A stretch of 64,000 nucleotides of DNA from positions 186,001 through 250,000 of the IMG/VR virus record IMGVR_UViG_3300010158_000027; one strand, given 5' to 3'. Within the stretch, counting starts at the first letter, position 1; every line of letters begins with the position of its first letter. The notes below the pieces were generated by a model. That model was not told the origin of the DNA. It did not search any database and saw only the letters and a list, made by a program, of their open reading frames with translations. Below, one piece after another: positions 39,852-51,690 of the stretch. A program made the translations under genes and the position numbers.

Positions 39852-39902
39852 TTTGGTGGACATAAATGAATGGTTTACTATATTTATAGTAAACCATTTT
39901 TT

Positions 39903-41357
39903 ATGCTTTTAACTAACGAGATTAAGATTAGGATCACTGGTAATGTGGGTGATTATTATAGAAAAAATAACATTGATGTTAAGTTTAATGAATATAATGA
40001 TTTGCCAATTGAGTTGGTTAATCCCCAAAGTCATTTAATTGTTGATGCGGTTTGTGATGTGTGTGGTAAAGAAGTAAAAATTCAATATAGAAGATATAAT
40101 CAATCGGTTAATAAAGGTGGGTATTACACTTGTTCTGCTAAGTGTGGTAAAAACAAAATGGAGGAAACTTTTTTAAAGAAATACGGTTCTAAAAGTATAT
40201 TTAAAACGGATGACTTTAAAGAGAAAAGTAAACAAAGTAATTTATTGAAATGGGGTTCTGAGCATTTTAGACAAAGTGAAAAATGGAAAAATGAAAGAGG
40301 GTTAGTTGAACAACAAAAAAGAAAAGACACTGTGTTTAATCAATTTTTAGTTGAAAACCCAAAAGTTATTGGTCAAGATGAAAACCATTTTATTATTAAA
40401 TGTGGTGTTCATGGGGAATCTAAAATACCTAAAAATTTATATTCTAATAGAAAGATTTGTAAAACTGAGTTTTGTTGTGAATGTAATCCAATTGATGGTA
40501 ATATATCAGGGAAAGAGATTTTGTTATACAAATTAATCGGTGAATTATATGATGGAGAGATTATTCAATCGTATAAAATAAATCGTAAAGAAATTGATGT
40601 TTATTTACCTGAATTAAAGATAGGGTTTGAATTTAATGGTTTAAGATGGCATTCTGAATTATTTGTTGATAATGATTATCATATTAAAAAGACCACATTG
40701 TGCCGTGAGAATAATGTTAGATTAATACATGTTTTTGAAGATGACTTTGATTTTAAAATTGATATTGTAAAATCGATTATTGGTAACATTTTAAAAACAT
40801 CTAACAAAATTTATGGTAGGAAAACAAATATTAGGGTAATCAAGGATAAAGAAATTGTTAAAGATTTTTTAAATAAAAATCACTTACAGGGGTTTGTTAA
40901 TACGAATATGAATTATGGGTTATATTATAATGATGAACTGATATCATTAATGACTTTTATGAAAACAAGAAAGGTATTGAACAAATCACATAAAGATGGT
41001 GAATATGAATTAGTTAGATTTTGTAATAAAATTGGTACCTCAGTTGTGGGTGGAGCTTCTAAATTGTTTAAACAATTCATTAAAGATTATAACCCAAGTA
41101 GCGTTTTATCTTATTGTGATATATCTTGGGCTAATGGTGATTTATATAAAAATCTTGGTTTTGAATTAATTGGGGTAAGTAAACCAAATTATTATTATGT
41201 TATTAATGGTAAGCGGGAAAATAGGATTAATTACCAAAAACATAAATTGGTTAAAAAGGGACATGATGTGAATTTGACTGAAGTGGAAATTATGTATGGG
41301 TTGGGTTATTATAGAATATTTAATTGCGGAAATGAGAAATATCTATATCTGAACTAA
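39903..41357 (+). CDS. Hef-like free-standing homing endonuclease (Zn fingers + PD-(D/E)XK + GNAT-like C-terminal domain)
   Basis: CDVC, CSAKC, CCEC; EIDVYLPELKIGFEFNGLRWHSE; NHLQG..YELVRFC..VVGGASKLF..SYCD. Confidence 0.75.
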   Translation: MLLTNEIKIRITGNVGDYYRKNNIDVKFNEYNDLPIELVNPQSHLIVDAVCDVCGKEVKIQYRRYNQSVNKGGYYTCSAKCGKNKMEETFLKKYGSKSIFKTDDFKEKSKQSNLLKWGSEHFRQSEKWKNERGLVEQQKRKDTVFNQFLVENPKVIGQDENHFIIKCGVHGESKIPKNLYSNRKICKTEFCCECNPIDGNISGKEILLYKLIGELYDGEIIQSYKINRKEIDVYLPELKIGFEFNGLRWHSELFVDNDYHIKKTTLCRENNVRLIHVFEDDFDFKIDIVKSIIGNILKTSNKIYGRKTNIRVIKDKEIVKDFLNKNHLQGFVNTNMNYGLYYNDELISLMTFMKTRKVLNKSHKDGEYELVRFCNKIGTSVVGGASKLFKQFIKDYNPSSVLSYCDISWANGDLYKNLGFELIGVSKPNYYYVINGKRENRINYQKHKLVKKGHDVNLTEVEIMYGLGYYRIFNCGNEKYLYLN

Positions 41358-41371
41358 ATCCCCAATTTTAA

Positions 41372-41443
41372 ATCCATACTTTTTACTTGTACTATAACCT
41401 CAAGGACGAATTCGTTAGAGTATTAAATTCTAAAATTGATTAA
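41372..41443 (+). pseudogene. Remnant of the original 3' end of the DHH gene
   Basis: Reads LKDEFVRVLNSKID* versus IQDQFVKVLQDKINNQ* at the end of 38433-39851. Confidence 0.6.
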
Positions 41444-41796
41444 TATAGGGACGTCTTTACACTGTCCCCCACTTTAATTCCTAGTGAATCACAGGTACCA
41501 CCAACAACCTCCAACACTTGATCACCAACTCCAGCGTAGGATTCACATGACGATTCATCATGACATGGTGGACAGTCACTATGAATGGATGTAATGGTAT
41601 CACCATTTATGAATATAATATCTAATGGAGTTATACAATCGTACATCCAAAAACTTTGATCACCATTGTTTGGTAACATAAAAAACATGCCGTTAAAATT
41701 CATATCGAAGGTTTTGTTTTGCATCCCTTCACGTATTGTTTTTGGTGTTGCACAAAGCCTACATTTGAATGTGTTTTCATTTATAATAATATTCAT
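41440..41796 (-). CDS. DUF192 (UPF0127) family protein
   Basis: GMFF..SFWMYDCITPLDIIFI..CPPC..VLEV.GG..LGIKVGD. Confidence 0.85.
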   Translation of the reverse strand: MNIIINENTFKCRLCATPKTIREGMQNKTFDMNFNGMFFMLPNNGDQSFWMYDCITPLDIIFINGDTITSIHSDCPPCHDESSCESYAGVGDQVLEVVGGTCDSLGIKVGDSVKTSLY

Positions 41797-41947
41797 ATAA
41801 TATAAATACCATTAAATCAGGTAATGGGTACTAAATTTAGGATATCTGATGGAAATATTGAAGTTTTTATAAGAAACTTTGGCTTTTGGTGTTTTTAGAC
41901 GTATTTATTATTACTTCCGTAAAATATTCATTTTTTTTATTTAAACG

Positions 41948-42004
41948 TTTGACAAAACAATTTAATAGCGTTAGATTTGTAAAACAATTAGGAAACGTCC
42001 TAAT
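41948..42004 (+). promoter_or_regulatory. Promoter P1 (TTTGACA-N17-TAGATTTG) plus ATTAGG-AAACGT-CCTAAT hairpin
   Basis: Consensus match; hairpin repeated with covariation after P2. Confidence 0.7.
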
Positions 42005-42040
42005 AAATAAATCGAATTATTAAATTTAAACGATTAAAAT

Positions 42041-42187
42041 ATGAGTGAAGAAATTGAAGTTGTTGAGAGCAAAATGTTCTACTACTACGGACCTAACGGA
42101 GAAAAACTTTACACACCTAACAGCGAGTTCGCCGCTGCTCAGGCTAGTAAATACGAGACTCACGATGTCTACGCAGAAAAAGCTTAA
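42041..42187 (+). CDS. 48-aa small ORF (MSEEIEVVESKMFYYYGPNG...)
   Basis: Translated by eye; lies between P1 and P2; strongly biased codons. Confidence 0.65.
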   Translation: MSEEIEVVESKMFYYYGPNGEKLYTPNSEFAAAQASKYETHDVYAEKA

Positions 42188-42203
42188 AAATGTCCACAAG
42201 GAC

Positions 42204-42272
42204 TTGTCTAATTGAAAAAAAAGACTTAACATTGTAAAACAAATCGGAAACGTCCGATAACGTTCTTTGAAA
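42204..42272 (+). promoter_or_regulatory. Promoter P2 (TTGTCT-N17-TAACAT), ATCGG-AAACGT-CCGAT hairpin and boxA-like GTTCTTTGAAA
   Basis: Directly visible motifs. Confidence 0.6.
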
Positions 42273-42279
42273 TTCTAAA

Positions 42280-43155
42280 ACCGACCGAAACAGTCACCAC
42301 AGTTAAAAAAAGTGAATATAACACCTCCCTTTCTTTAAACGTGAAACTAAATTAAGTCATTGGGCCGTGTATGGTCCATTAAAATAAACCACGAAAGTGG
42401 GATAAAGTGAATTTGCGAGTGTTAGTAGATTTGCGTCTTGGGAAACTGAGGTCGAGTACACAAGTGGGATATCATCCGACCTTTAGTATTGAGGGCGACG
42501 CTTTAGGGAAAGTGGTTGGATGGAACGGCAATGTGGATTGTCAGTCTGAGGAGGGAACTCCAATAAGAATAACCCATAGGTATCAAGCGAAAAATATAAA
42601 TTCCAAATATATAATTGCGGATACCATTATAAAAGGGGACTTAAAACCGAAAGGTAAGATAAAGAACGAGTGGTGTCGCTATTATCCCTATCAAAGATCT
42701 ACCAAGATCTTGATATGAAGTAATCTTAAAATATGGAAATGGGGACATTTCACGAGGTAGTCAGGTATTCTGTTTTTCAAAAGAAAATGGATCCTAAACG
42801 GACCGCTACTTTGATTCATCCACAACACACAACTTATTACTAAATTAAGTAAAATTAACTAAAAATAAGCAAAAGTGTTCGTTACGATATGACGGAAGTT
42901 ACCCACCTATTCACTGGCTGTCAGTGGAACGTGATAACCGCAAGTTTGACCGTATTTTTATGAAAAATCTCTAGGACGTCGAAATCCGAATCAGGACGCA
43001 ATCTTGATGAGACAGGAGTAGTAAGAGAGTAGTTGTATCGTCAAGGAGTGATTGGTCTAACCAATCGGTAATGAGTGTTACAGGACAAAATCCTGTGGAT
43101 AAGAGTAGAATACATAATGACTCAAAAGACACTTAATAAAAACTATAATCTCAGG
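42280..43155 (+). ncRNA. Large ornate structured RNA, GOLLD-like candidate
   Basis: ~880 nt without a credible ORF, GC-richer than its flanks; many GNRA-capped stems; long-range GAGAGTAGTT/AACTATAATCTC closing stem; followed by a tRNA. 5' boundary approximate. Confidence 0.7.
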
Positions 43156-43176
43156 TTTTTTTTAATATTCAAATAT

Positions 43177-43249
43177 AGCAGGGGGGAGGTAAGGTATTTC
43201 ATTGGTCTCATAAGCCAACTCAAGCTGGTTCGATTCCGGTCCGATGCTA
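43177..43249 (+). tRNA. tRNA with CAT anticodon (Met or Ile2), imperfect acceptor stem
   Basis: D, anticodon (TTGGT-CTCATAA-GCCAA) and T (GCTGG-TTCGATT-CCGGT) arms intact; acceptor has a mismatch/bulge and G at position 8. Confidence 0.6.
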
Positions 43250-43260
43250 CAATATAATTA

Positions 43261-43289
43261 AACTCTACCCCAAAAAGGTGGGGTTTTTT
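43261..43289 (+). terminator. Intrinsic terminator closing the RNA operon
   Basis: AACTCTACC/GGTGGGGTT stem plus U-tract. Confidence 0.75.
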
Positions 43290-43364
43290 CGTTTATAATC
43301 CTTACTTTTTCAATTAACTATATATTTATATTGGAAGATAAAAAAATTATAAACAAAAAGTATT

Positions 43365-43877
43365 ATGAAAAAAATAGTTAGACTAACAGAATCGGATTTA
43401 ACTGATCTTATTAAAAGAATCGTTGAAGAGTCTGAAAACGATATGAAATCAACAGATGAAGATGGTGATAATGAAATGTCCAAACAAGATGCGATAGATT
43501 TAATTGCCAAATTCCTTGATAAAAAAGTTTTACCAAAACTAGACGACGAGGAAATACGTGATTTGAAACGAAAATCAGCACCAAAACGATCAAGAGGTAT
43601 TCAAGAAGAAGAAATGGATTCTAAAAGTAGAATGTCAAACTTCAAAGAAAAAATGATGATTAGAGGTGGTTTAGGTACTGCGGCCGCTGGGGTAATCGCA
43701 ACACTTAGCGAATTCACAGGTTGGTCTGAATCTGCGATGTTATCAAAAATACATTCATTTATTGAACAGGCAGGAGCTGGTAATTATGCTGGACCTATTT
43801 CAGTAGCTATGGTTGCTGCAGGATTGGCGTTAGCTCTTAAAGGTAAAGACGTACAATACAGAAGAACAAACAAATAA
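43365..43877 (+). CDS. LTESDL-leader late protein with C-terminal hydrophobic segments
   Basis: Leader family; TATTTAT at 43323; two Ala/Gly-rich hydrophobic stretches. Confidence 0.7.
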   Translation: MKKIVRLTESDLTDLIKRIVEESENDMKSTDEDGDNEMSKQDAIDLIAKFLDKKVLPKLDDEEIRDLKRKSAPKRSRGIQEEEMDSKSRMSNFKEKMMIRGGLGTAAAGVIATLSEFTGWSESAMLSKIHSFIEQAGAGNYAGPISVAMVAAGLALALKGKDVQYRRTNK

Positions 43878-43898
43878 TTAAAAAAAATCATATAAAAG

Positions 43899-43926
43899 AA
43901 ATCCCCCCAATACAGGGGGATTTTTT
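43899..43926 (+). terminator. Intrinsic terminator (AATACAGG family)
   Basis: AAATCCCCC/GGGGGATTT stem. Confidence 0.8.
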
Positions 43927-43930
43927 GGTT

Positions 43931-44263
43931 TCATCTATTTTTTAAATAACCCTCCAAGATCACAATAACCGCATCGATTTCATCCTTGTCCTCGTCACTA
44001 ACTAAATTTGAATTTTTATTTAGGTACATGTATTTCCATAAAACGAAGTAGTGAAAAAGAAACACCAGGGACAATGTGAATAACGTCACATTAACGAATA
44101 TTAAATACGGGATAAAAATTGAAAGAAATGATAAAATAAAATTATAATTTCTTGAATTAGAAAGTGATAAAAACTTATAAGTTAATATCGTTCTTCTCAA
44201 TTTTAAAGTTGACACATTTTTATACAATTCAGCTTCTTTTTGGATTTTATCTCTGTCTACCAT
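43931..44263 (-). CDS. Two-TM membrane protein
   Basis: Hydrophobic core. Confidence 0.6.
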   Translation of the reverse strand: MVDRDKIQKEAELYKNVSTLKLRRTILTYKFLSLSNSRNYNFILSFLSIFIPYLIFVNVTLFTLSLVFLFHYFVLWKYMYLNKNSNLVSDEDKDEIDAVIVILEGYLKNR

Positions 44264-44396
44264 GTCTTAAATTTTTATAAAACAAATATATGAATAATTC
44301 ACTAACCGGCAATTAATAAATGATATTTTTATAATATTCAAGTGAAATTAATTATTTATTTTTTTGTCATTGAATTAAAAAGCGTATATTTGTTGT

Positions 44397-44807
44397 ATGA
44401 AAAACGGATATAAAGTAGGACGAGCAATATCGGATAACCACATTAAGTCGGTTAAAAAATTAATTAAAGACAAAGTTTACGTCGTGGAATCGAACGGAAA
44501 CCCTGAAGGTTGGATATTTGATTATTATATAAATAACTCGATAATCAAAATCACATCGATTAGAAAGTATCGACACGCCAATGAAAGGTACCGAGACGAC
44601 CTAAAATATGCATATGAAATTGACGTTATTATTGATATGACAAATGCTCGTCACAACTCTGATAGGTATAGCGCTAGACGAATGGGTAGTATGTTGAGGG
44701 GTCCGTTATTACGAAGAATTGATGATGAGTTAAAATATTTCGGAATCGACGCATGTAGATATGCAACAATTTCAAAAATTAATTTCCAAACGGGTAGTTT
44801 AATATAA
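44397..44807 (+). CDS. Hypothetical early-type protein
   Basis: TATATTTG 4 nt before ATG. Confidence 0.65.
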   Translation: MKNGYKVGRAISDNHIKSVKKLIKDKVYVVESNGNPEGWIFDYYINNSIIKITSIRKYRHANERYRDDLKYAYEIDVIIDMTNARHNSDRYSARRMGSMLRGPLLRRIDDELKYFGIDACRYATISKINFQTGSLI

Positions 44808-44839
44808 AAAAAAGTATTACATTTGTTTAAATCAAAGAT

Positions 44840-45106
44840 ATGGCGACACTAAAACACATAACGATTATTCATCCTAAATATGGGGAAATATTGAATGAGA
44901 CATTCATCGATGAGGTACAATTCAAATTGTTTTTAAAAATGATACACTCGTCTATTGAGTTGAAACAATCACTATCTACGTTCAACGGGAAGGACTTTTT
45001 GATTCACGTACCAACTGAAATCTTAAAAGAGTGTGTGGTTATAGGTGTAGCAAAAGAGGTGTCGATGGTTGATGTTATGGTTGCAAAATCTAAGTTGGAA
45101 GGGTAG
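44840..45106 (+). CDS. Hypothetical protein
   Basis: Follows a TACATTTG motif. Confidence 0.65.
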   Translation: MATLKHITIIHPKYGEILNETFIDEVQFKLFLKMIHSSIELKQSLSTFNGKDFLIHVPTEILKECVVIGVAKEVSMVDVMVAKSKLEG

Positions 45107-45169
45107 TTTCTTTGTTTCTCTTTAAAACAAAGTGGTGGTTGCTCGAATCACAATCCGTGATCGACCCTG

Positions 45170-45198
45170 AAAGGTGAGAGAAATCTCACCTTTTTTTT
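45170..45198 (+). terminator. Intrinsic terminator
   Basis: AAAGGTGAGA-GAAA-TCTCACCTTT plus T8. Confidence 0.85.
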
Positions 45199-45219
45199 GT
45201 TTGTGTGATATTTATTATT

Positions 45220-45591
45220 ATGAATATTAATGAAATCATAAAAAAGGTATTGAAAGAAGAGTTTCTAACGAATTCCTTAATATATGAGGATGAGTTTGGA
45301 TCGGTCGAAGAGGTTAACATTCTAACTGAAGCGGAGTATCAAGGTAGAAATGTGAGTCTTGGTAAAGTCATGCAGGGGGATATTAAAAAGTTTAAGGTTT
45401 ATGTTAAAAACGATAAAGGAAAAGTCGTTAAGGTGAATTTTGGATTTGGTGGTAAATCTGCACATGGGAAACGAATGGTTATTAAAAAAAATAATCCTGA
45501 ACGTAGAAAATCGTTTAGAGCGAGAATGAATTGTGACAGTCCAGGTCCCAGATGGAAACCTAGATATTGGAGCTGTCGGACTTGGAATTAA
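45220..45591 (+). CDS. Late basic protein (VKVNFG..RRKSFRARMNCD..YWSC)
   Basis: TATTTAT 4 nt upstream; leader ending VLKEE. Confidence 0.7.
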   Translation: MNINEIIKKVLKEEFLTNSLIYEDEFGSVEEVNILTEAEYQGRNVSLGKVMQGDIKKFKVYVKNDKGKVVKVNFGFGGKSAHGKRMVIKKNNPERRKSFRARMNCDSPGPRWKPRYWSCRTWN

Positions 45592-45960: not shown

Positions 45961-47289
45961 GTCACTCCACCGAAAAACCCAACCATCTTTAGTGGTTGGG
46001 ATGTAAGGTGTGAAATAATTTAATATTTTTTTAATAAAATTCTTCTTTTTGTTAAAACCAAGATATTTATATAATATGAAGGTTATTAACAAATCATACA
46101 AAGTTAGAATTTACCCTAATAAAGAACAAAAAGTTCTTTTGGAAAAACATTTTGGTTGTATTAGATTCGTATATAATCATTTTTTAAATGTTAGAAATCT
46201 GGAATATAAAGAGAATAAAATCAATCTGAATTATGTTGTAACGGCAAATAAACTATCAGAAATGAAAAATTTAGAAAATTTTAACTTTCTTAATGAGGTT
46301 AATTCACAATCATTACAATGGAGTTTAAAATATTTAGATAACTCATTTAGAAACTTCTTCAGAGGACAAACAAAATTCCCTAATTTTAAGAAAAAATCAA
46401 ATAACCAATCATTTAAAGTACCGGTTAATTCTACATTTAAAATAGAAAAAAATAAAATTATTATCCCTAAATTTAGAGAAGGTATCCATTTTAGAGGTAA
46501 ATTAGAATTAAAAAATTTAATTAAATTTAATTCAATTAATATATCCAAAACCGCATCAGGTAAATATTATGCTTCATTACAAGGGGAATTTAATTATACA
46601 CCTAAAGTTCAAAATGATAATAAAGTAGGTATTGACTTAGGTTTAAAAAAGTTTTTAATAACCGATACTGGTGTTAAATTTGACAATCCTAAATTCCTTA
46701 AAAAACAATTAAAAAAATTAAAATACAAACAAAAACAATTAAGTAAAAAAAATAAAGGTTCTAATAATAGACAAAAACAAAGAATTTTAGTATCTTTAAT
46801 TCATGAAAAAATAAGTAATAAAAGAAATGATTTTTTACATAAGTTAAGTCAAAAAATAGTTAATGAAAATCAAATTATCTGTTTAGAAAACTTATCTGTT
46901 AAAAATATGATAAAAAACCATAAATTAGCTCAATCAATATCAGATGTTAGTTGGTCAAAATTTGTTGATATGTTAAAATATAAATCGGATTGGAATGATA
47001 GACAATTAGTTCAGATAGATAGGTTCTATCCTAGTTCTAAAAGTTGTTCCGCTTGTCATTATATAAACGAAGGATTAACATTAAAAGATGGAGAATGGAC
47101 TTGTCCTTCTTGTAATACACATCACGATAGAGATGTAAATGCTGCTAAAAATATCCTTATACAAGGAATAAACATATTGTCTGGTTCGGGAACCGAGTCG
47201 GACATTAAACAAAAACCTGTGGAGGCGTTGCGGTTACGCAAGTCTAAGAAACAGGAATCCCATTCATCTTTAGTGATTGGGTAGTTCAA
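45961..47289. mobile_element. tnpB-only IS200/IS605-family element
   Basis: Subterminal hairpins CCCAACCA-TCTTTAG-TGGTTGGG (45978-46000) and CCCATTCA-TCTTTAG-TGATTGGG (47259-47281); right end ...GTTCAA; left boundary approximate. Confidence 0.8.
46076..47284 (+). CDS. tnpB: TnpB RNA-guided endonuclease
   Basis: SYKVRIYP HTH; RuvC GIDLG, CLENL and DRDVNAA; CSAC/CPSC zinc finger. Confidence 0.93.
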   Translation: MKVINKSYKVRIYPNKEQKVLLEKHFGCIRFVYNHFLNVRNLEYKENKINLNYVVTANKLSEMKNLENFNFLNEVNSQSLQWSLKYLDNSFRNFFRGQTKFPNFKKKSNNQSFKVPVNSTFKIEKNKIIIPKFREGIHFRGKLELKNLIKFNSINISKTASGKYYASLQGEFNYTPKVQNDNKVGIDLGLKKFLITDTGVKFDNPKFLKKQLKKLKYKQKQLSKKNKGSNNRQKQRILVSLIHEKISNKRNDFLHKLSQKIVNENQIICLENLSVKNMIKNHKLAQSISDVSWSKFVDMLKYKSDWNDRQLVQIDRFYPSSKSCSACHYINEGLTLKDGEWTCPSCNTHHDRDVNAAKNILIQGINILSGSGTESDIKQKPVEALRLRKSKKQESHSSLVIG

Positions 47290-51565: not shown

Positions 51566-51612
51566 TTTACATAATACTTGACAATCTAAAAGTGATGGTT
51601 TAATATTATGTA

Positions 51613-51684
51613 AGTCAGTTAGCTCAGTTGGTAGAGCAATCCCCTTAAAAGGACGTGTCATTGGTTCGAACCCTTTACTGGCTT
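51613..51684 (+). pseudogene. Degenerate tRNA behind its own TTGACA-N17-TAATAT promoter
   Basis: Perfect acceptor (AGTCAGT/ACTGGCT) and D-arm; anticodon and T stems poorly paired. Confidence 0.55.
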
Positions 51685-51690
51685 ATTTTT

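What the first reader, a model, noticed from the sequence alone, without database searches (positions are those of the whole stretch)
42280..43155. ~880-nt ornate non-coding RNA (GOLLD-like) followed by a tRNA
SEEN: no credible ORF, and dense stems: TGGGCC/GGTCCA (42361), CCAC-GAAA-GTGG (42389), CTTGG-GAAA-CTGAG (42437), GGAG-GGAA-CTCC (42550), ACC-GAAA-GGT (42646), AAGATCT/AGATCTT (~42695), CACTG/CAGTG (42912), TCAGGA/TCTTGA (42991), GATTGGT/ACCAATC (43050), ACAGGA/TCCTGT (43080). A 3' multi-way junction is closed by GAGAGTAGTT/AACTATAATCTC. ESTABLISHED: GOLLD and ROOL RNAs are large, GNRA-rich, often phage-borne, lie next to tRNA genes, and their function is unknown. INFERENCE: this is a GOLLD-family member or a new ornate RNA class.
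Basis: partly seen in the sequence, partly recalled or inferred. Interest (0 to 1): 0.7.

Follow-up and report, generated by a model that had tools for sequence, protein, structure and literature searches.

The report
GOLLD cage RNA in lake phage
This is a genuine member of the known GOLLD family of giant phage RNAs (which self-assemble into protein-free cages), sitting in a 281-kb freshwater phage, very abundant in lake RNA samples, followed by a decayed tRNA-Met look-alike and preceded by a small conserved protein gene that travels with it.

Summary
Rfam's GOLLD model (RF02032) matches window 42753-43157 end to end at 277 bits (cut-off 150). The Rfam model covers only the 3' half. The 5' half (42361-42752) is collinear with GOLLD env-38, whose 14-mer cage structure is solved. 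In 28 non-redundant phage homologues, 66 of its 102 predicted pairs show compensatory changes. No ORF is conserved.

In five of six lake and freshwater metatranscriptomes, assembled RNA covers only about 42287-43142, at depth 100-1100, while flanking genes sit at 0-3.

The "tRNA" (43178-43248, anticodon CAU) falls below tRNA thresholds. It occupies the position of a true tRNA-Met in relatives and keeps its stems, so it is most likely a 3'-processing handle.

The host is probably Bacteroidota.

New leads:
- A 48-aa gene (42041-42187) is linked to GOLLD in 10 of 11 loci sampled from the protein side.
- An invariant box, GTTCTTTGAA, precedes the RNA.
- A copy of the 16S rRNA 3' tail sits in a 5' hairpin.

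Verdict: a new member of a known kind. The function of GOLLD remains unknown.

The parts
41949..42003 (+). Promoter of the small ORF (TTGACA 41949-41954; -7 box TAGATTTG 41972-41979), followed by the hairpin TTAGGA-AACG-TCCTAA (41988-42003).
   Evidence: The same promoter-plus-hairpin cassette occurs only twice in the 281-kb genome, here and before GOLLD.
42041..42187 (+). ORF48: a 48-aa acidic protein of unknown function, the conserved upstream partner gene of GOLLD in this clade.
   Evidence: Searches show the family alignment. There are 227 clusters and 95 representatives. It has no Pfam, PHROG or PDB match. In protein-first sampling GOLLD lies directly downstream in 10 of 11 loci.
42204..42234 (+). 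Bacteroidota-type promoter of the GOLLD unit: -33 TTG at 42204-42206, a 20-nt spacer, then the -7 box TAACATTG at 42227-42234. Homologues have TTGAC-N19-TAACTTTG.
   Evidence: alignment of upstream regions. One search shows the motif type is enriched on the coding strand of the genome.
42243..42258 (+). Leader hairpin ATCGGA-AACG-TCCGAT, which could also act as a palindromic operator.
   Evidence: Compensatory variants are CAGGA/TCCTG in L027 and L044, and TTAGGA/TCCTAA at 41988.
42262..42271 (+). Invariant box GTTCTTTGAA, lying 8-16 nt before the first GOLLD helix in all homologues. It is either a second promoter element or a processing signal.
   Evidence: It is not part of the abundant RNA.
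42272..42360 (+). Clade-specific 5' extension with hairpin 42283-42295 and a long A/U-rich hairpin 42298-42343. The apical part of the long hairpin carries AACACCUCCCUUUCU (42320-42334), a copy of the Bacteroidota 16S 3' tail with one extra C.
   Evidence: One search shows compensatory changes (CACA/UGUG, ACAAA/UUUGU, AUAAA/UUUAU). establish the 16S tail. RNA contigs start at 42287 and 42291.
42361..42752 (+). GOLLD 5' domain of the env-38 type, which forms the cage 'cap' in the solved structure.
   Evidence: 102 pairs, 66 with double-sided changes, 97% of cells paired against 36-40% in slid controls. It is collinear with the env-38 sequence printed. The 21-nt motif at 42392 is found in 74 phage contigs.
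42753..43157 (+). GOLLD conserved 3' domain (Rfam RF02032, model positions 1-416). It includes the A-rich linker 42814-42884, the P21a loop with palindromic UCGA (42979-42982), the P21b hairpin 42991-43007 and the terminal hairpin P27.
   Evidence: (277.2 bits, gathering score 150).
43156..43177 (+). Conserved U-tract (43156-43163) and the spacer CAAATATA before the tRNA-like element. This is the probable region of the mature 3' end.
   Evidence: RNA contigs end at 43129-43142.
43178..43248 (+). tRNA-like element with anticodon loop CUCAUAA (CAU). It has a cloverleaf with two mismatches in the acceptor stem. It is the degenerate orthologue of the tRNA-Met found 9-11 nt after GOLLD in relatives, and is proposed to be an RNase P processing handle.
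   Evidence: 20.8 bits against 29; ARAGORN does not call it; the MFE structure is a cloverleaf; true tRNA-Met at the same place in L010, L011, L065 and L037; minihelices in others; and L006 (stem-preserving substitutions).
43260..43292 (+). Intrinsic terminator (a 10-bp stem with ACCCCA/TGGGGT, then a T-run) that closes the GOLLD-tRNA-like unit.

Best explanation
Window 42361-43157 encodes a full-length GOLLD RNA of the env-38 type. In this clade it carries an added 5' hairpin extension that starts at about 42277-42291. The host genome is a 281-kb freshwater jumbo phage, which probably infects Bacteroidota.

Shown:
- The RNA belongs to the GOLLD family.
- Its structure is supported by covariation across both domains.
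- In nature it exists as a discrete, very abundant RNA of about 850-880 nt, while its neighbouring genes are nearly silent.

Inferred:
- Transcription starts at a Bacteroidota-type promoter (42204-42234) and/or at the invariant GTTCTTTGAA box.
- Transcription runs through the tRNA-like element to the terminator at 43260-43292.
- RNase P cleavage at the 5' edge of the tRNA-like element (43178), followed by trimming, releases the GOLLD 3' end.
- By homology with env-38 (PDB 9MEE), the RNA then self-assembles without protein into a closed dihedral homo-oligomer, most likely a 14-mer. The 5' domains would form the caps, the 3' domains the equatorial rings joined by the self-complementary P21a/P21b loops, and the A-rich linkers would point inwards.
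- The cage makes the RNA nuclease-resistant and therefore abundant. It serves the phage as an RNA-only compartment or sequestering scaffold connected with the translation and tRNA apparatus.

The cargo or target is not known. The co-travelling 48-aa protein is the first candidate to test.
For: Family membership: RF02032 matches at 277.2 bits over model positions 1-416.

The 5' domain:
- It aligns with the GOLLD of a 635-kb phage.
- Its 21-nt motif occurs in 74 phage contigs, with the 3'-end motif 750-785 nt downstream.
- It is collinear with the printed env-38 sequence.

Covariation: 66 of 102 pairs show double-sided changes and 97% of cells are paired, against 17-24 pairs and 36-40% in slid controls. 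The P27 and pseudoknot helices also covary.

Loops that form intermolecular kissing contacts in the solved cage stay self-complementary: UCGA here, and GC or AU in relatives (Kretsch 2025, PMC12286853).

Expression:
- In RNA runs X8, X11, X17, X19 and X20, contigs cover only about 42287-43142 at depth 100-1100, with flanks at 0-3.
- Adapter junctions lie at 42291 and 43129.
- The DNA control X1 is flat, 31 over GOLLD against 26.8 over the flank.

Promoter and host:
- Upstream alignment.
- Motif enrichment of 31 against 12.8 +/- 4.5.
- SD-like motifs before only 7 of 279 ORFs.

tRNA-like handle:
- A true tRNA-Met lies 9-11 nt after GOLLD in L010, L011, L065 and L037.
- Acceptor/T-arm minihelices occupy the same place in L003, L009, L024 and L076.
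- Substitutions preserve the stems in L006 and in the X18 strain.
- A terminator lies only after the element.
Against: - Oligomerisation was not tested here and rests on homology. Stoichiometry varies within the family: 10-, 12- and 14-mers are reported (PMC12990946). This RNA also lacks the P11a extension of env-38.
- RNA ends come from assembled contigs, not raw reads, so the 5' end (42277-42291) and the 3' end (43142-43177) are approximate.
- One RNA run (X18) has a contig that bridges GOLLD, the tRNA-like element and the terminator, and it also covers flanking genes. That may be precursor RNA or DNA carry-over.
- RNase P processing is an inference. The acceptor stem has two mismatches, and one strain variant introduces an A.A mismatch in the T stem.
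- About half of the homologues have no tRNA-like element at all, only a spacer and a terminator.
- The biological function of any GOLLD RNA is unknown.
Confidence: 0.85

Rival explanations
1. The cage idea is incidental. The RNA acts directly on the host translation apparatus, for example as a multivalent decoy. The 16S-3'-tail copy displayed on the 5' extension hairpin (42320-42334) would titrate a protein that binds the anti-Shine-Dalgarno tail in Bacteroidota ribosomes (bS21 is the obvious candidate). Alternatively, the RNA holds or protects tRNAs and ribosome-rescue factors against host tRNA-targeting defences.
For: - AACACCUCC(C)UUUCU equals the last 14 nt of Bacteroidota 16S rRNA with one inserted C. 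It is conserved in six relatives.
- Kretsch et al. cite ribosome binding by GOLLD in pull-downs, and sequestration of bS21 (RpsU) as a hypothesis for OLE RNA.
- Relatives place GOLLD beside tRNA arrays, tmRNA, SmpB, T4-type RNA ligase 1 and an arginyl-tRNA transferase domain.
Against: - The tail copy sits in a clade-specific extension. A sister group has AACCCCCUUUUCUUU instead, and env-38 lacks the extension altogether.
- The tract is also simply the pyrimidine strand of an A/U-rich hairpin.
- The phage's own genes lack SD sequences, so freeing the ribosomal anti-SD would not obviously help it.
- No binding data exist.
Confidence: 0.15
2. The tRNA-like element at 43178-43248 is just a decaying tRNA-Met pseudogene with no role. 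The GOLLD 3' end is then set by termination at the conserved U-tract directly after hairpin P27 (43156-43163).
For: - It scores below the tRNA threshold and has two acceptor-stem mismatches.
- An Aeromonas phage annotates an 85%-identical 54-nt stretch as tRNA-Pseudo-CAT.
- The U-tract after P27 is conserved in most homologues, and about half of them have no tRNA-like element.
- RNA contigs stop before 43157.
Against: - The P27 stem has only 3-4 bp with a 9-nt loop, which makes a poor intrinsic terminator. The strong terminator lies after the tRNA-like element.
- The two differences from L006 both turn G.U pairs into A-U pairs.
- The X18 strain carries a compensatory U-A to C-G change in the anticodon stem and two wobble-to-Watson-Crick changes.
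- tRNA, tRNA-like or minihelix structures recur at this exact position in distant relatives.
Confidence: 0.35
3. The region is a new class of ornate RNA unrelated to GOLLD, or a protein-coding or DNA-level element.
For: An ORF of 103 aa (42407-42718) exists.
Against: - The full-length Rfam GOLLD match has E = 5e-78.
- The region is collinear with env-38.
- The ORF is not conserved in frame, strand or position.
- Substitutions follow base-pairing, not codons.
- The region is present as abundant RNA.
Confidence: 0.01

Closest known systems
GOLLD RNA env-38 (Rfam RF02032; cryo-EM structure PDB 9MEE; Kretsch et al. 2025, PMC12286853)
   Same: - The same 3' domain (full Rfam model) and a collinear 5' domain.
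- Shared blocks include GGCCG..UAUGGUC, CGAAAG.GGAUAAAGUG, CAAUAAGAAUAAC, GUGGUG, the UACCA-loop hairpin and GAAGUAA.CUU.
- A conserved GAAA loop at the P11 position.
- P21a and P21b hairpins with self-complementary loops, and an A-rich internal linker.
- An environmental aquatic phage origin with a tRNA-Met neighbour.
   Different: - The core is about 36 nt shorter (797 against 833 nt). The P11a extension is replaced by a plain ACC-GAAA-GGU hairpin.
- The P21a loop carries a 4-nt palindrome, UCGA, instead of the GC/CG dinucleotide.
- There is an extra 5' extension of about 75-85 nt with two hairpins.
- tRNA-Met is upstream in env-38. Here a degenerate copy lies downstream.
- The oligomeric state of this member is untested.
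Streptococcus agalactiae GOLLD (12-mer, PDB 9L0R) and Lactobacillales/Mycobacterium prophage GOLLDs
   Same: The same family and 3' domain, location in phage or tRNA-array contexts, and cage-forming behaviour.
   Different: - Those members lack P9, P11a-c and P21b, and form 10- or 12-mers (PMC12990946).
- They reside in prophages or bacterial tRNA arrays.
- The 5'-domain motif of this subtype was found in none of 185,579 prokaryote species genomes.
ROOL RNA (another phage-borne ornate cage-forming RNA)
   Same: It is large, GNRA-rich, phage-encoded, located near tRNAs, forms an RNA-only cage, and has no known function.
   Different: Its sequence and fold are unrelated. No Rfam ROOL match was found in the window.
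tRNA-like 3'-end processing modules (e.g. the MALAT1-mascRNA arrangement in vertebrates; tRNA punctuation of polycistronic transcripts), recalled from general knowledge
   Same: A tRNA-shaped element directly 3' of a long, stable non-coding RNA could recruit RNase P to generate the mature 3' end.
   Different: This is an analogy only. No cleavage has been shown here, and this element descends from a real phage tRNA-Met gene.

Membership tests
GOLLD RNA (RF02032) | A covariance-model match above the curated gathering score over the conserved 3' domain. | tested here: met
   277.2 bits against 150, model positions 1-416 of 416, E = 5e-78.
GOLLD RNA (RF02032) | The helices and long-range pseudoknot of the 3' domain are kept by compensatory changes. 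| tested here: met
   The Rfam alignment shows all helices formed. In 28 homologues the pseudoknot strands (42886-42895 / 43031-43041) and P27 covary.
GOLLD RNA (RF02032) | A large, separately folding 5' domain (about 400 nt) upstream of the conserved half, giving about 800 nt or more in total. | tested here: met
   The domain spans 42361-42752. It has 102 predicted pairs, 66 with double-sided changes, and 97% of cells paired against 36-40% in slid controls. It is collinear by eye with the env-38 sequence printed.
GOLLD RNA (RF02032) | It is encoded by phages or prophages, usually beside tRNA genes. | tested here: met
   The genome is an IMG/VR virus record of 281,269 bp, 96% complete. A tRNA-Met-like element follows directly. 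Homologues sit next to true tRNA-Met genes or inside tRNA arrays. This genome has only three other tRNAs and no tRNA island nearby.
GOLLD RNA (RF02032) | It is expressed as a discrete long non-coding RNA. | tested here: met
   In five metatranscriptomes, contigs are confined to about 42287-43142 at 100-1100x, with flanks at 0-3. The DNA control is flat. Contigs carry no strand information and give only approximate ends.
GOLLD RNA (RF02032) | It assembles into a protein-free dihedral homo-oligomeric cage. | not testable with these tools
   Support is indirect only. The P21a and P21b loops, which kiss their own copies in 9MEE, remain self-complementary: UCGA here, and GC or AU in relatives.
tRNA (RF00005), for 43178-43248 | A score above the Rfam gathering threshold, or detection by ARAGORN. 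| tested here: not met
   It scores 20.8 bits against 29, and ARAGORN does not report it.
tRNA (RF00005), for 43178-43248 | A cloverleaf with a 7-bp acceptor stem, a T arm with a UUCGAUU-type loop and a 7-nt anticodon loop. | tested here: inconclusive
   The MFE structure is a cloverleaf with a normal anticodon arm (CUCAUAA) and T arm. The acceptor stem has a 2x2 mismatch and the D stem is weak. The position is orthologous to true tRNA-Met genes in L010, L011, L065 and L037.

The most novel reading that the evidence does not exclude
In this freshwater-phage clade GOLLD is not a lone RNA gene. It is one half of a mobile two-gene module consisting of a 48-aa acidic protein (ORF48) and GOLLD, which share the same promoter-plus-hairpin cassette. 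The small protein would be the long-sought partner of the cage: cargo, assembly or opening factor, or co-effector. The clade-specific 5' hairpin that displays a copy of the host 16S rRNA 3' tail would point the cage at the Bacteroidota ribosome or at bS21.
Probability: 0.15. Interest if true: 0.75.

Novelty: new member of a known kind. Interest (0 to 1): 0.4.

Why it matters
GOLLD is one of the largest structured bacterial/phage RNAs, and its cage architecture has only recently been solved. Its function has remained unknown since 2009. This locus does not change what GOLLD is, but it gives practical handles on that question:

1. Field evidence that the RNA accumulates far above neighbouring phage transcripts in lakes.
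2. A probable host phylum (Bacteroidota) with genetically tractable Flavobacterium models.
3. A small conserved protein gene that travels with GOLLD through different genomic contexts.
4. A recurrent tRNA, tRNA-like or minihelix element exactly at the 3' end, which suggests how the RNA is matured.
5. A 16S-tail mimic that can be tested for ribosome or bS21 binding.

Tried and rejected
- **Conserved ORF across the region.** Rejected: the longest open frame changes strand and frame among homologues.
- **Prophage or host identification.** I scanned 185,579 prokaryote species genomes with the 5'-domain 21-mer and found no hits. Host inference therefore rests on promoter and SD statistics only.
- **Leader-trailer pairing.** An rRNA-like RNase III stem between GTTCTTTGAA and the spacer after the U-tract gives only 6 bp here and is not conserved in relatives. 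Rejected.
- **GTTCTTTGAA pairing with the invariant P14 loop UUCAAAAGA.** The match is imperfect (it needs a bulge) and both elements are invariant, so it cannot be tested. Left open.
Not supported.
- **Fold of ORF48.** The AlphaFold model has pLDDT 73. Foldseek against the PDB gave nothing with E <= 0.001, only weak beta-grasp/PB1-like resemblance. Pfam and PHROGs gave nothing.
- **Mapping env-38 residue numbers onto the window by alignment.** Not done, because the env-38 sequence exists only as printed text. Loci that share a 23-nt env-38 motif (L090-L098) are not env-38 itself.
- **The Weinberg 2009 paper.** It could not be read because it is not held. Statements about it come from Kretsch 2025 or from memory.
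- **Raw reads.** None were available. All runs are kept as contigs, so exact RNA ends and strandedness could not be read.
Full report
**1. What is there**

A cmscan of the whole window against Rfam 15 gives one strong non-tRNA hit. GOLLD (RF02032) matches 42753-43157 on the + strand at 277.2 bits (gathering score 150), E = 5e-78, covering model positions 1-416 of 416 (repeated). It is the only copy in the genome.

The Rfam model describes only the conserved 3' half of GOLLD.

The window is bases 186001-250000 of a single 281,269-bp IMG/VR virus record, rated 96% complete. Almost all of its genes lie on one strand and most of its proteins are unknown.

**2. Checking the observation**

- GNRA-capped hairpins number 10, against 1.95 +/- 1.39 in shuffles.
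- The MFE z-score is -2.7.
- The 103-aa ORF at 42407-42718 is not conserved. In 28 non-redundant homologues the longest stop-free stretch jumps between strands, frames and positions.

**3. Homologues and structure of the 5' half**

A blastn search against phage records found the GOLLD of a 635-kb uncultured phage (LR745206). It aligns with the window from about 42360 to 43160.

A 21-nt motif from the 5' half (CGAAAGNGGGATAAAGTGAAT, window 42392) occurs in 74 IMG/VR contigs. In the 51 contigs with enough flank, the GOLLD 3'-end motif TAATCTCA follows 750-785 nt later, as it does in the window.

After removing sequences more than 95% identical, 28 remained. On the 5' domain (42350-42760), RNAalifold predicts 102 pairs:
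- 66 of them have at least one sequence in which both sides changed and the pair was kept.
- 97% of cells are standard pairs.
- Sliding the 3' partner by 1-3 columns gives only 17-24 such pairs and 36-40% paired.

This includes the AAGATCT/AGATCTT hairpin, whose stem changes freely under an invariant UACCAA loop (alignment).

The exception is the proposed closing helix GAGAGTAGTT/AACTATAATCTC. Its AGTT belongs to the covarying pseudoknot helix formed with 42886-42895. AACU...AGGU is the small terminal hairpin P27, which itself covaries (ACG/CGU, AGG/CCU, AGC/GCU, GGA/UCC).

The env-38 GOLLD sequence is printed in the supplement of Kretsch et al.. It is collinear, block by block, with window 42361-43157. 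The env-38 construct starts at the GGCCG that corresponds to 42363 and ends at UCUCAGCCU, which corresponds to 43149-43157. The window RNA is therefore of the same subtype as the solved 14-mer cage (PDB 9MEE). Its main difference is a shorter P11 region: ACC-GAAA-GGU instead of a nested GGGGAAACCCC hairpin. This comparison was made by eye, because the printed sequence could not be passed to a tool.

**4. Expression in nature**

The k-mer index found the sequence in many freshwater DNA runs and in six metatranscriptomes.

I laid their contigs on window 40500-45500, with these results:
- Runs X8, X11, X17 and X19 show depth 100-1100 between about 42287 and 43142. Everywhere else the depth is 0-3.
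- X20 behaves the same way, at 100-184 against 0.
- In X8 a 749-nt contig of 100% identity starts at 42287.
- In X11 one contig starts at 42291 directly after an Illumina adapter, and another ends at 43129 directly before an adapter.
- The DNA run X1 is flat across GOLLD and its downstream flank, 31 against 26.8, so DNA carry-over cannot explain the RNA profile.
- X18 is the exception. It holds a related strain, covers flanking genes too, and has one contig bridging 43064-43352.
- The leader 42205-42290 is not held by the RNA runs that hold the body.

Caveat: these are assembled contigs without strand information, so the ends are approximate.

**5. The transcription unit**

Upstream alignment shows three elements:
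1. A Bacteroidota-type promoter: TTG, a 19-20 nt spacer, then TAnnTTTG. In the window this is TTG 42204-42206 and TAACATTG 42227-42234.
2. Usually a hairpin (42243-42258) with compensatory variants.
3. An invariant box, GTTCTTTGAA (42262-42271). It lies 8-16 nt before the first GOLLD helix in all 28 homologues, in the loci found from the protein side, and in loci carrying an env-38 motif.

Two readings of the box remain open. It could be a second -7-like promoter element, with a start near 42277. That would fit the contig starts at 42287 and 42291, allowing for the usual loss of extreme 5' ends. Alternatively it could be a processing signal.

The promoter-plus-hairpin cassette occurs only twice in the genome. 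The other copy drives the small ORF just upstream.

Downstream, P27 is followed by a conserved U-tract, then a short spacer, then the tRNA-like element. Only after that comes a strong intrinsic terminator at 43260-43292.

**6. The 'tRNA'**

ARAGORN does not call it, and the Rfam tRNA model gives 20.8 bits against a threshold of 29.

Its MFE structure is nevertheless a cloverleaf. It has a normal anticodon arm (loop CUCAUAA, anticodon CAU) and T arm (UUCGAUU). The acceptor stem has a 2x2 mismatch.

What relatives carry at this position:
- L010, L011, L065 and L037 have a bona fide tRNA-Met(CAT) starting 9-11 nt after GOLLD. It is preceded by the same CAAATAT spacer.
- L003, L009, L024 and L076 carry an acceptor-plus-T-arm minihelix.
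- L001, L012, L027 and L046 carry other tRNA-like forms.
- About half have only a spacer and a terminator.

The two differences between the window and its 90% relative L006 both convert G.U pairs of the T stem into A-U. The X18 strain has a compensatory U-A to C-G change in the anticodon stem and two wobble-to-Watson-Crick changes. It also has one A.A mismatch.

I read the element as a degenerate descendant of a tRNA-Met gene, retained as a processing handle for RNase P. I give this about 0.55, against about 0.35 for a functionless pseudogene.

**7. Host**

- The composite Bacteroidota promoter motif occurs 31 times on the coding strand, 16 times on the other strand, and 12.8 +/- 4.5 times in shuffles.
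- SD-like motifs precede only 7 of 279 ORFs (15 in a control window), and positions -14 to -11 are A-rich.
- Both features are typical of Bacteroidota. That attribution rests on established knowledge and is an inference here.
- The GOLLD 5' motif is absent from 185,579 prokaryote species genomes, so no prophage copy points to a host.

**8. How it probably works**

The literature shows the following:
- GOLLD env-38 forms a closed D7 14-mer, 380 Å across.
- The 5' domains form the caps and the 3' domains the rings.
- The variable linker lies inside.
- Symmetric kissing loops L21a and L21b join the two halves.
- Other members form 10- or 12-mers.
- The function is unknown.

In the window the P21a loop carries the 4-nt palindrome UCGA (42979-42982). 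Relatives carry GC or AU, which are all self-complementary. The P21b loop keeps GC. The conserved GAAA at the P11 position and the A-rich linker (42814-42884) are also present.

I therefore infer that this RNA forms the same kind of cage. Its nuclease-resistant assembly would then explain why it is 100-1000 times more abundant than the mRNA of ORF48, which has the same promoter type.

What the cage does is not known. The gene neighbourhoods of relatives point towards translation and tRNA biology. They include tRNA arrays, tmRNA, SmpB, T4-type RNA ligase 1 and an arginyl-tRNA transferase domain.

**9. Leads found on the way**

*(a) ORF48 (42041-42187).* It encodes a 48-aa acidic protein with a predicted beta-beta-alpha-beta fold (pLDDT 73). 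It has no Pfam, PHROG or PDB relative.

- Homologues lie directly upstream of GOLLD in 14 of the 28 non-redundant loci.
- The family has 227 clusters at 90% identity and 95 representatives at 50%.
- Starting from the protein instead of the RNA, 10 of 11 loci with at least 1 kb of downstream DNA carry a GOLLD (266-332 bits) right after the ORF. These loci came from 8 family members. The genes on either side differ between loci.
- The one exception is the most divergent member. It is followed by the same promoter type but an unrecognised sequence.
- The sampled members are related, so this shows a module and does not yet prove a functional partnership. The protein's acidity argues against simple RNA binding.

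*(b) The 16S-tail copy.* The clade-specific 5' extension has two covariation-supported hairpins. The apex of the second carries AACACCUCCCUUUCU (42320-42334).

- The 19-mer GCTGGAACACCTCCTTTCT hits at least 120 genome records, almost all Bacteroidota.
- In Flavobacterium laiguense it is the very 3' end of the 16S rRNA.
- The GOLLD hairpin therefore displays the last 14 nt of the host-phylum 16S rRNA with one extra C.
- It is conserved in six relatives but replaced by AACCCCCUUUUCUUU in a sister group.
- It may be a decoy, or merely the pyrimidine strand of an A/U-rich stem.

**10. Verdict**

It is a new member of a known, structurally solved family and not a new class. Its value lies in the handles it offers on GOLLD's unknown function.

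Noticed in passing
window 42041-42187 (+); homologues in L006, L011, L013, L014, L021, L023, L033, L039, L044, L048, L051, L065, L067, L077-L086: A 46-55-aa acidic protein family with no annotation (pattern ..YYY..G.K.YTPN..FA...A..YGT..VYVEK) is encoded directly upstream of GOLLD. It travels with GOLLD through different gene contexts, and GOLLD lies downstream in 10 of 11 protein-first loci.
   Followed up: yes
window 42320-42334 (+): AACACCUCCCUUUCU, at the apex of a 5' hairpin of the RNA, copies the 3'-terminal 14 nt of Bacteroidota 16S rRNA (the anti-Shine-Dalgarno tail) with one inserted C. It is conserved in six relatives and differs in a sister group.
   Followed up: partly
window 42262-42271 (+); L083 2723 and 3064: The invariant box GTTCTTTGAA precedes every GOLLD of this subtype. 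In L083 a second copy, with the same promoter and hairpin, precedes an unrecognised non-coding stretch of about 300 nt, possibly another RNA.
   Followed up: partly
window 41949-42003 and 42204-42258 (+): A Bacteroidota-type promoter followed by a GGAAACGTCC-centred hairpin or palindrome occurs exactly twice in the 281-kb genome, before ORF48 and before GOLLD. The hairpin could equally be an operator for a dimeric repressor.
   Followed up: partly
L077/L078 4652-5070 (-); L086 3829-4263; L083 1-773; L077 3684-4352: In related phages GOLLD is flanked by a phage-encoded tmRNA (72-74 bits), SmpB, a T4-type RNA ligase 1 and an arginyl-tRNA-protein transferase domain. This is a translation, ribosome-rescue and tRNA-repair neighbourhood.
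   Followed up: no
window 51612-51685 (+): A tRNA (Rfam 41.3 bits) whose anticodon ARAGORN cannot name. It has an unusual anticodon arm with loop CUUAAAA and is one of only three tRNAs ARAGORN finds in the genome.
   Followed up: no
window 46049-47284 (+): A 411-aa ORF (TTG start) matches PHROG 506 'transposase' at 5e-128. It is possibly a TnpB/IS605-type gene inside the phage genome, and any guide RNA beside it was not examined.
   Followed up: no
window 39870-41357 (+) and 41440-41796 (-): A homing/HNH endonuclease (phrog_3339, 4e-96) and a DUF192 protein lie just upstream of the ORF48-GOLLD module. DUF192 and the 136-aa ORF at 44397-44807 are also syntenic in several relatives.
   Followed up: partly
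whole genome G000 (window = 186001-250000): Signals of a Bacteroidota host. TTG-N18-21-TAnnTTTG is enriched on the coding strand (31 against 16, and 12.8 in shuffles). Only 7 of 279 ORFs have an SD-like motif, and the upstream regions are A-rich.
   Followed up: yes
L043 (IMGVR_UViG_3300020161_001956, 14,520 bp): This contig carries the GOLLD locus twice as a perfect inverted duplication around its centre. It is probably an assembly artefact and was excluded from the analyses.
   Followed up: no
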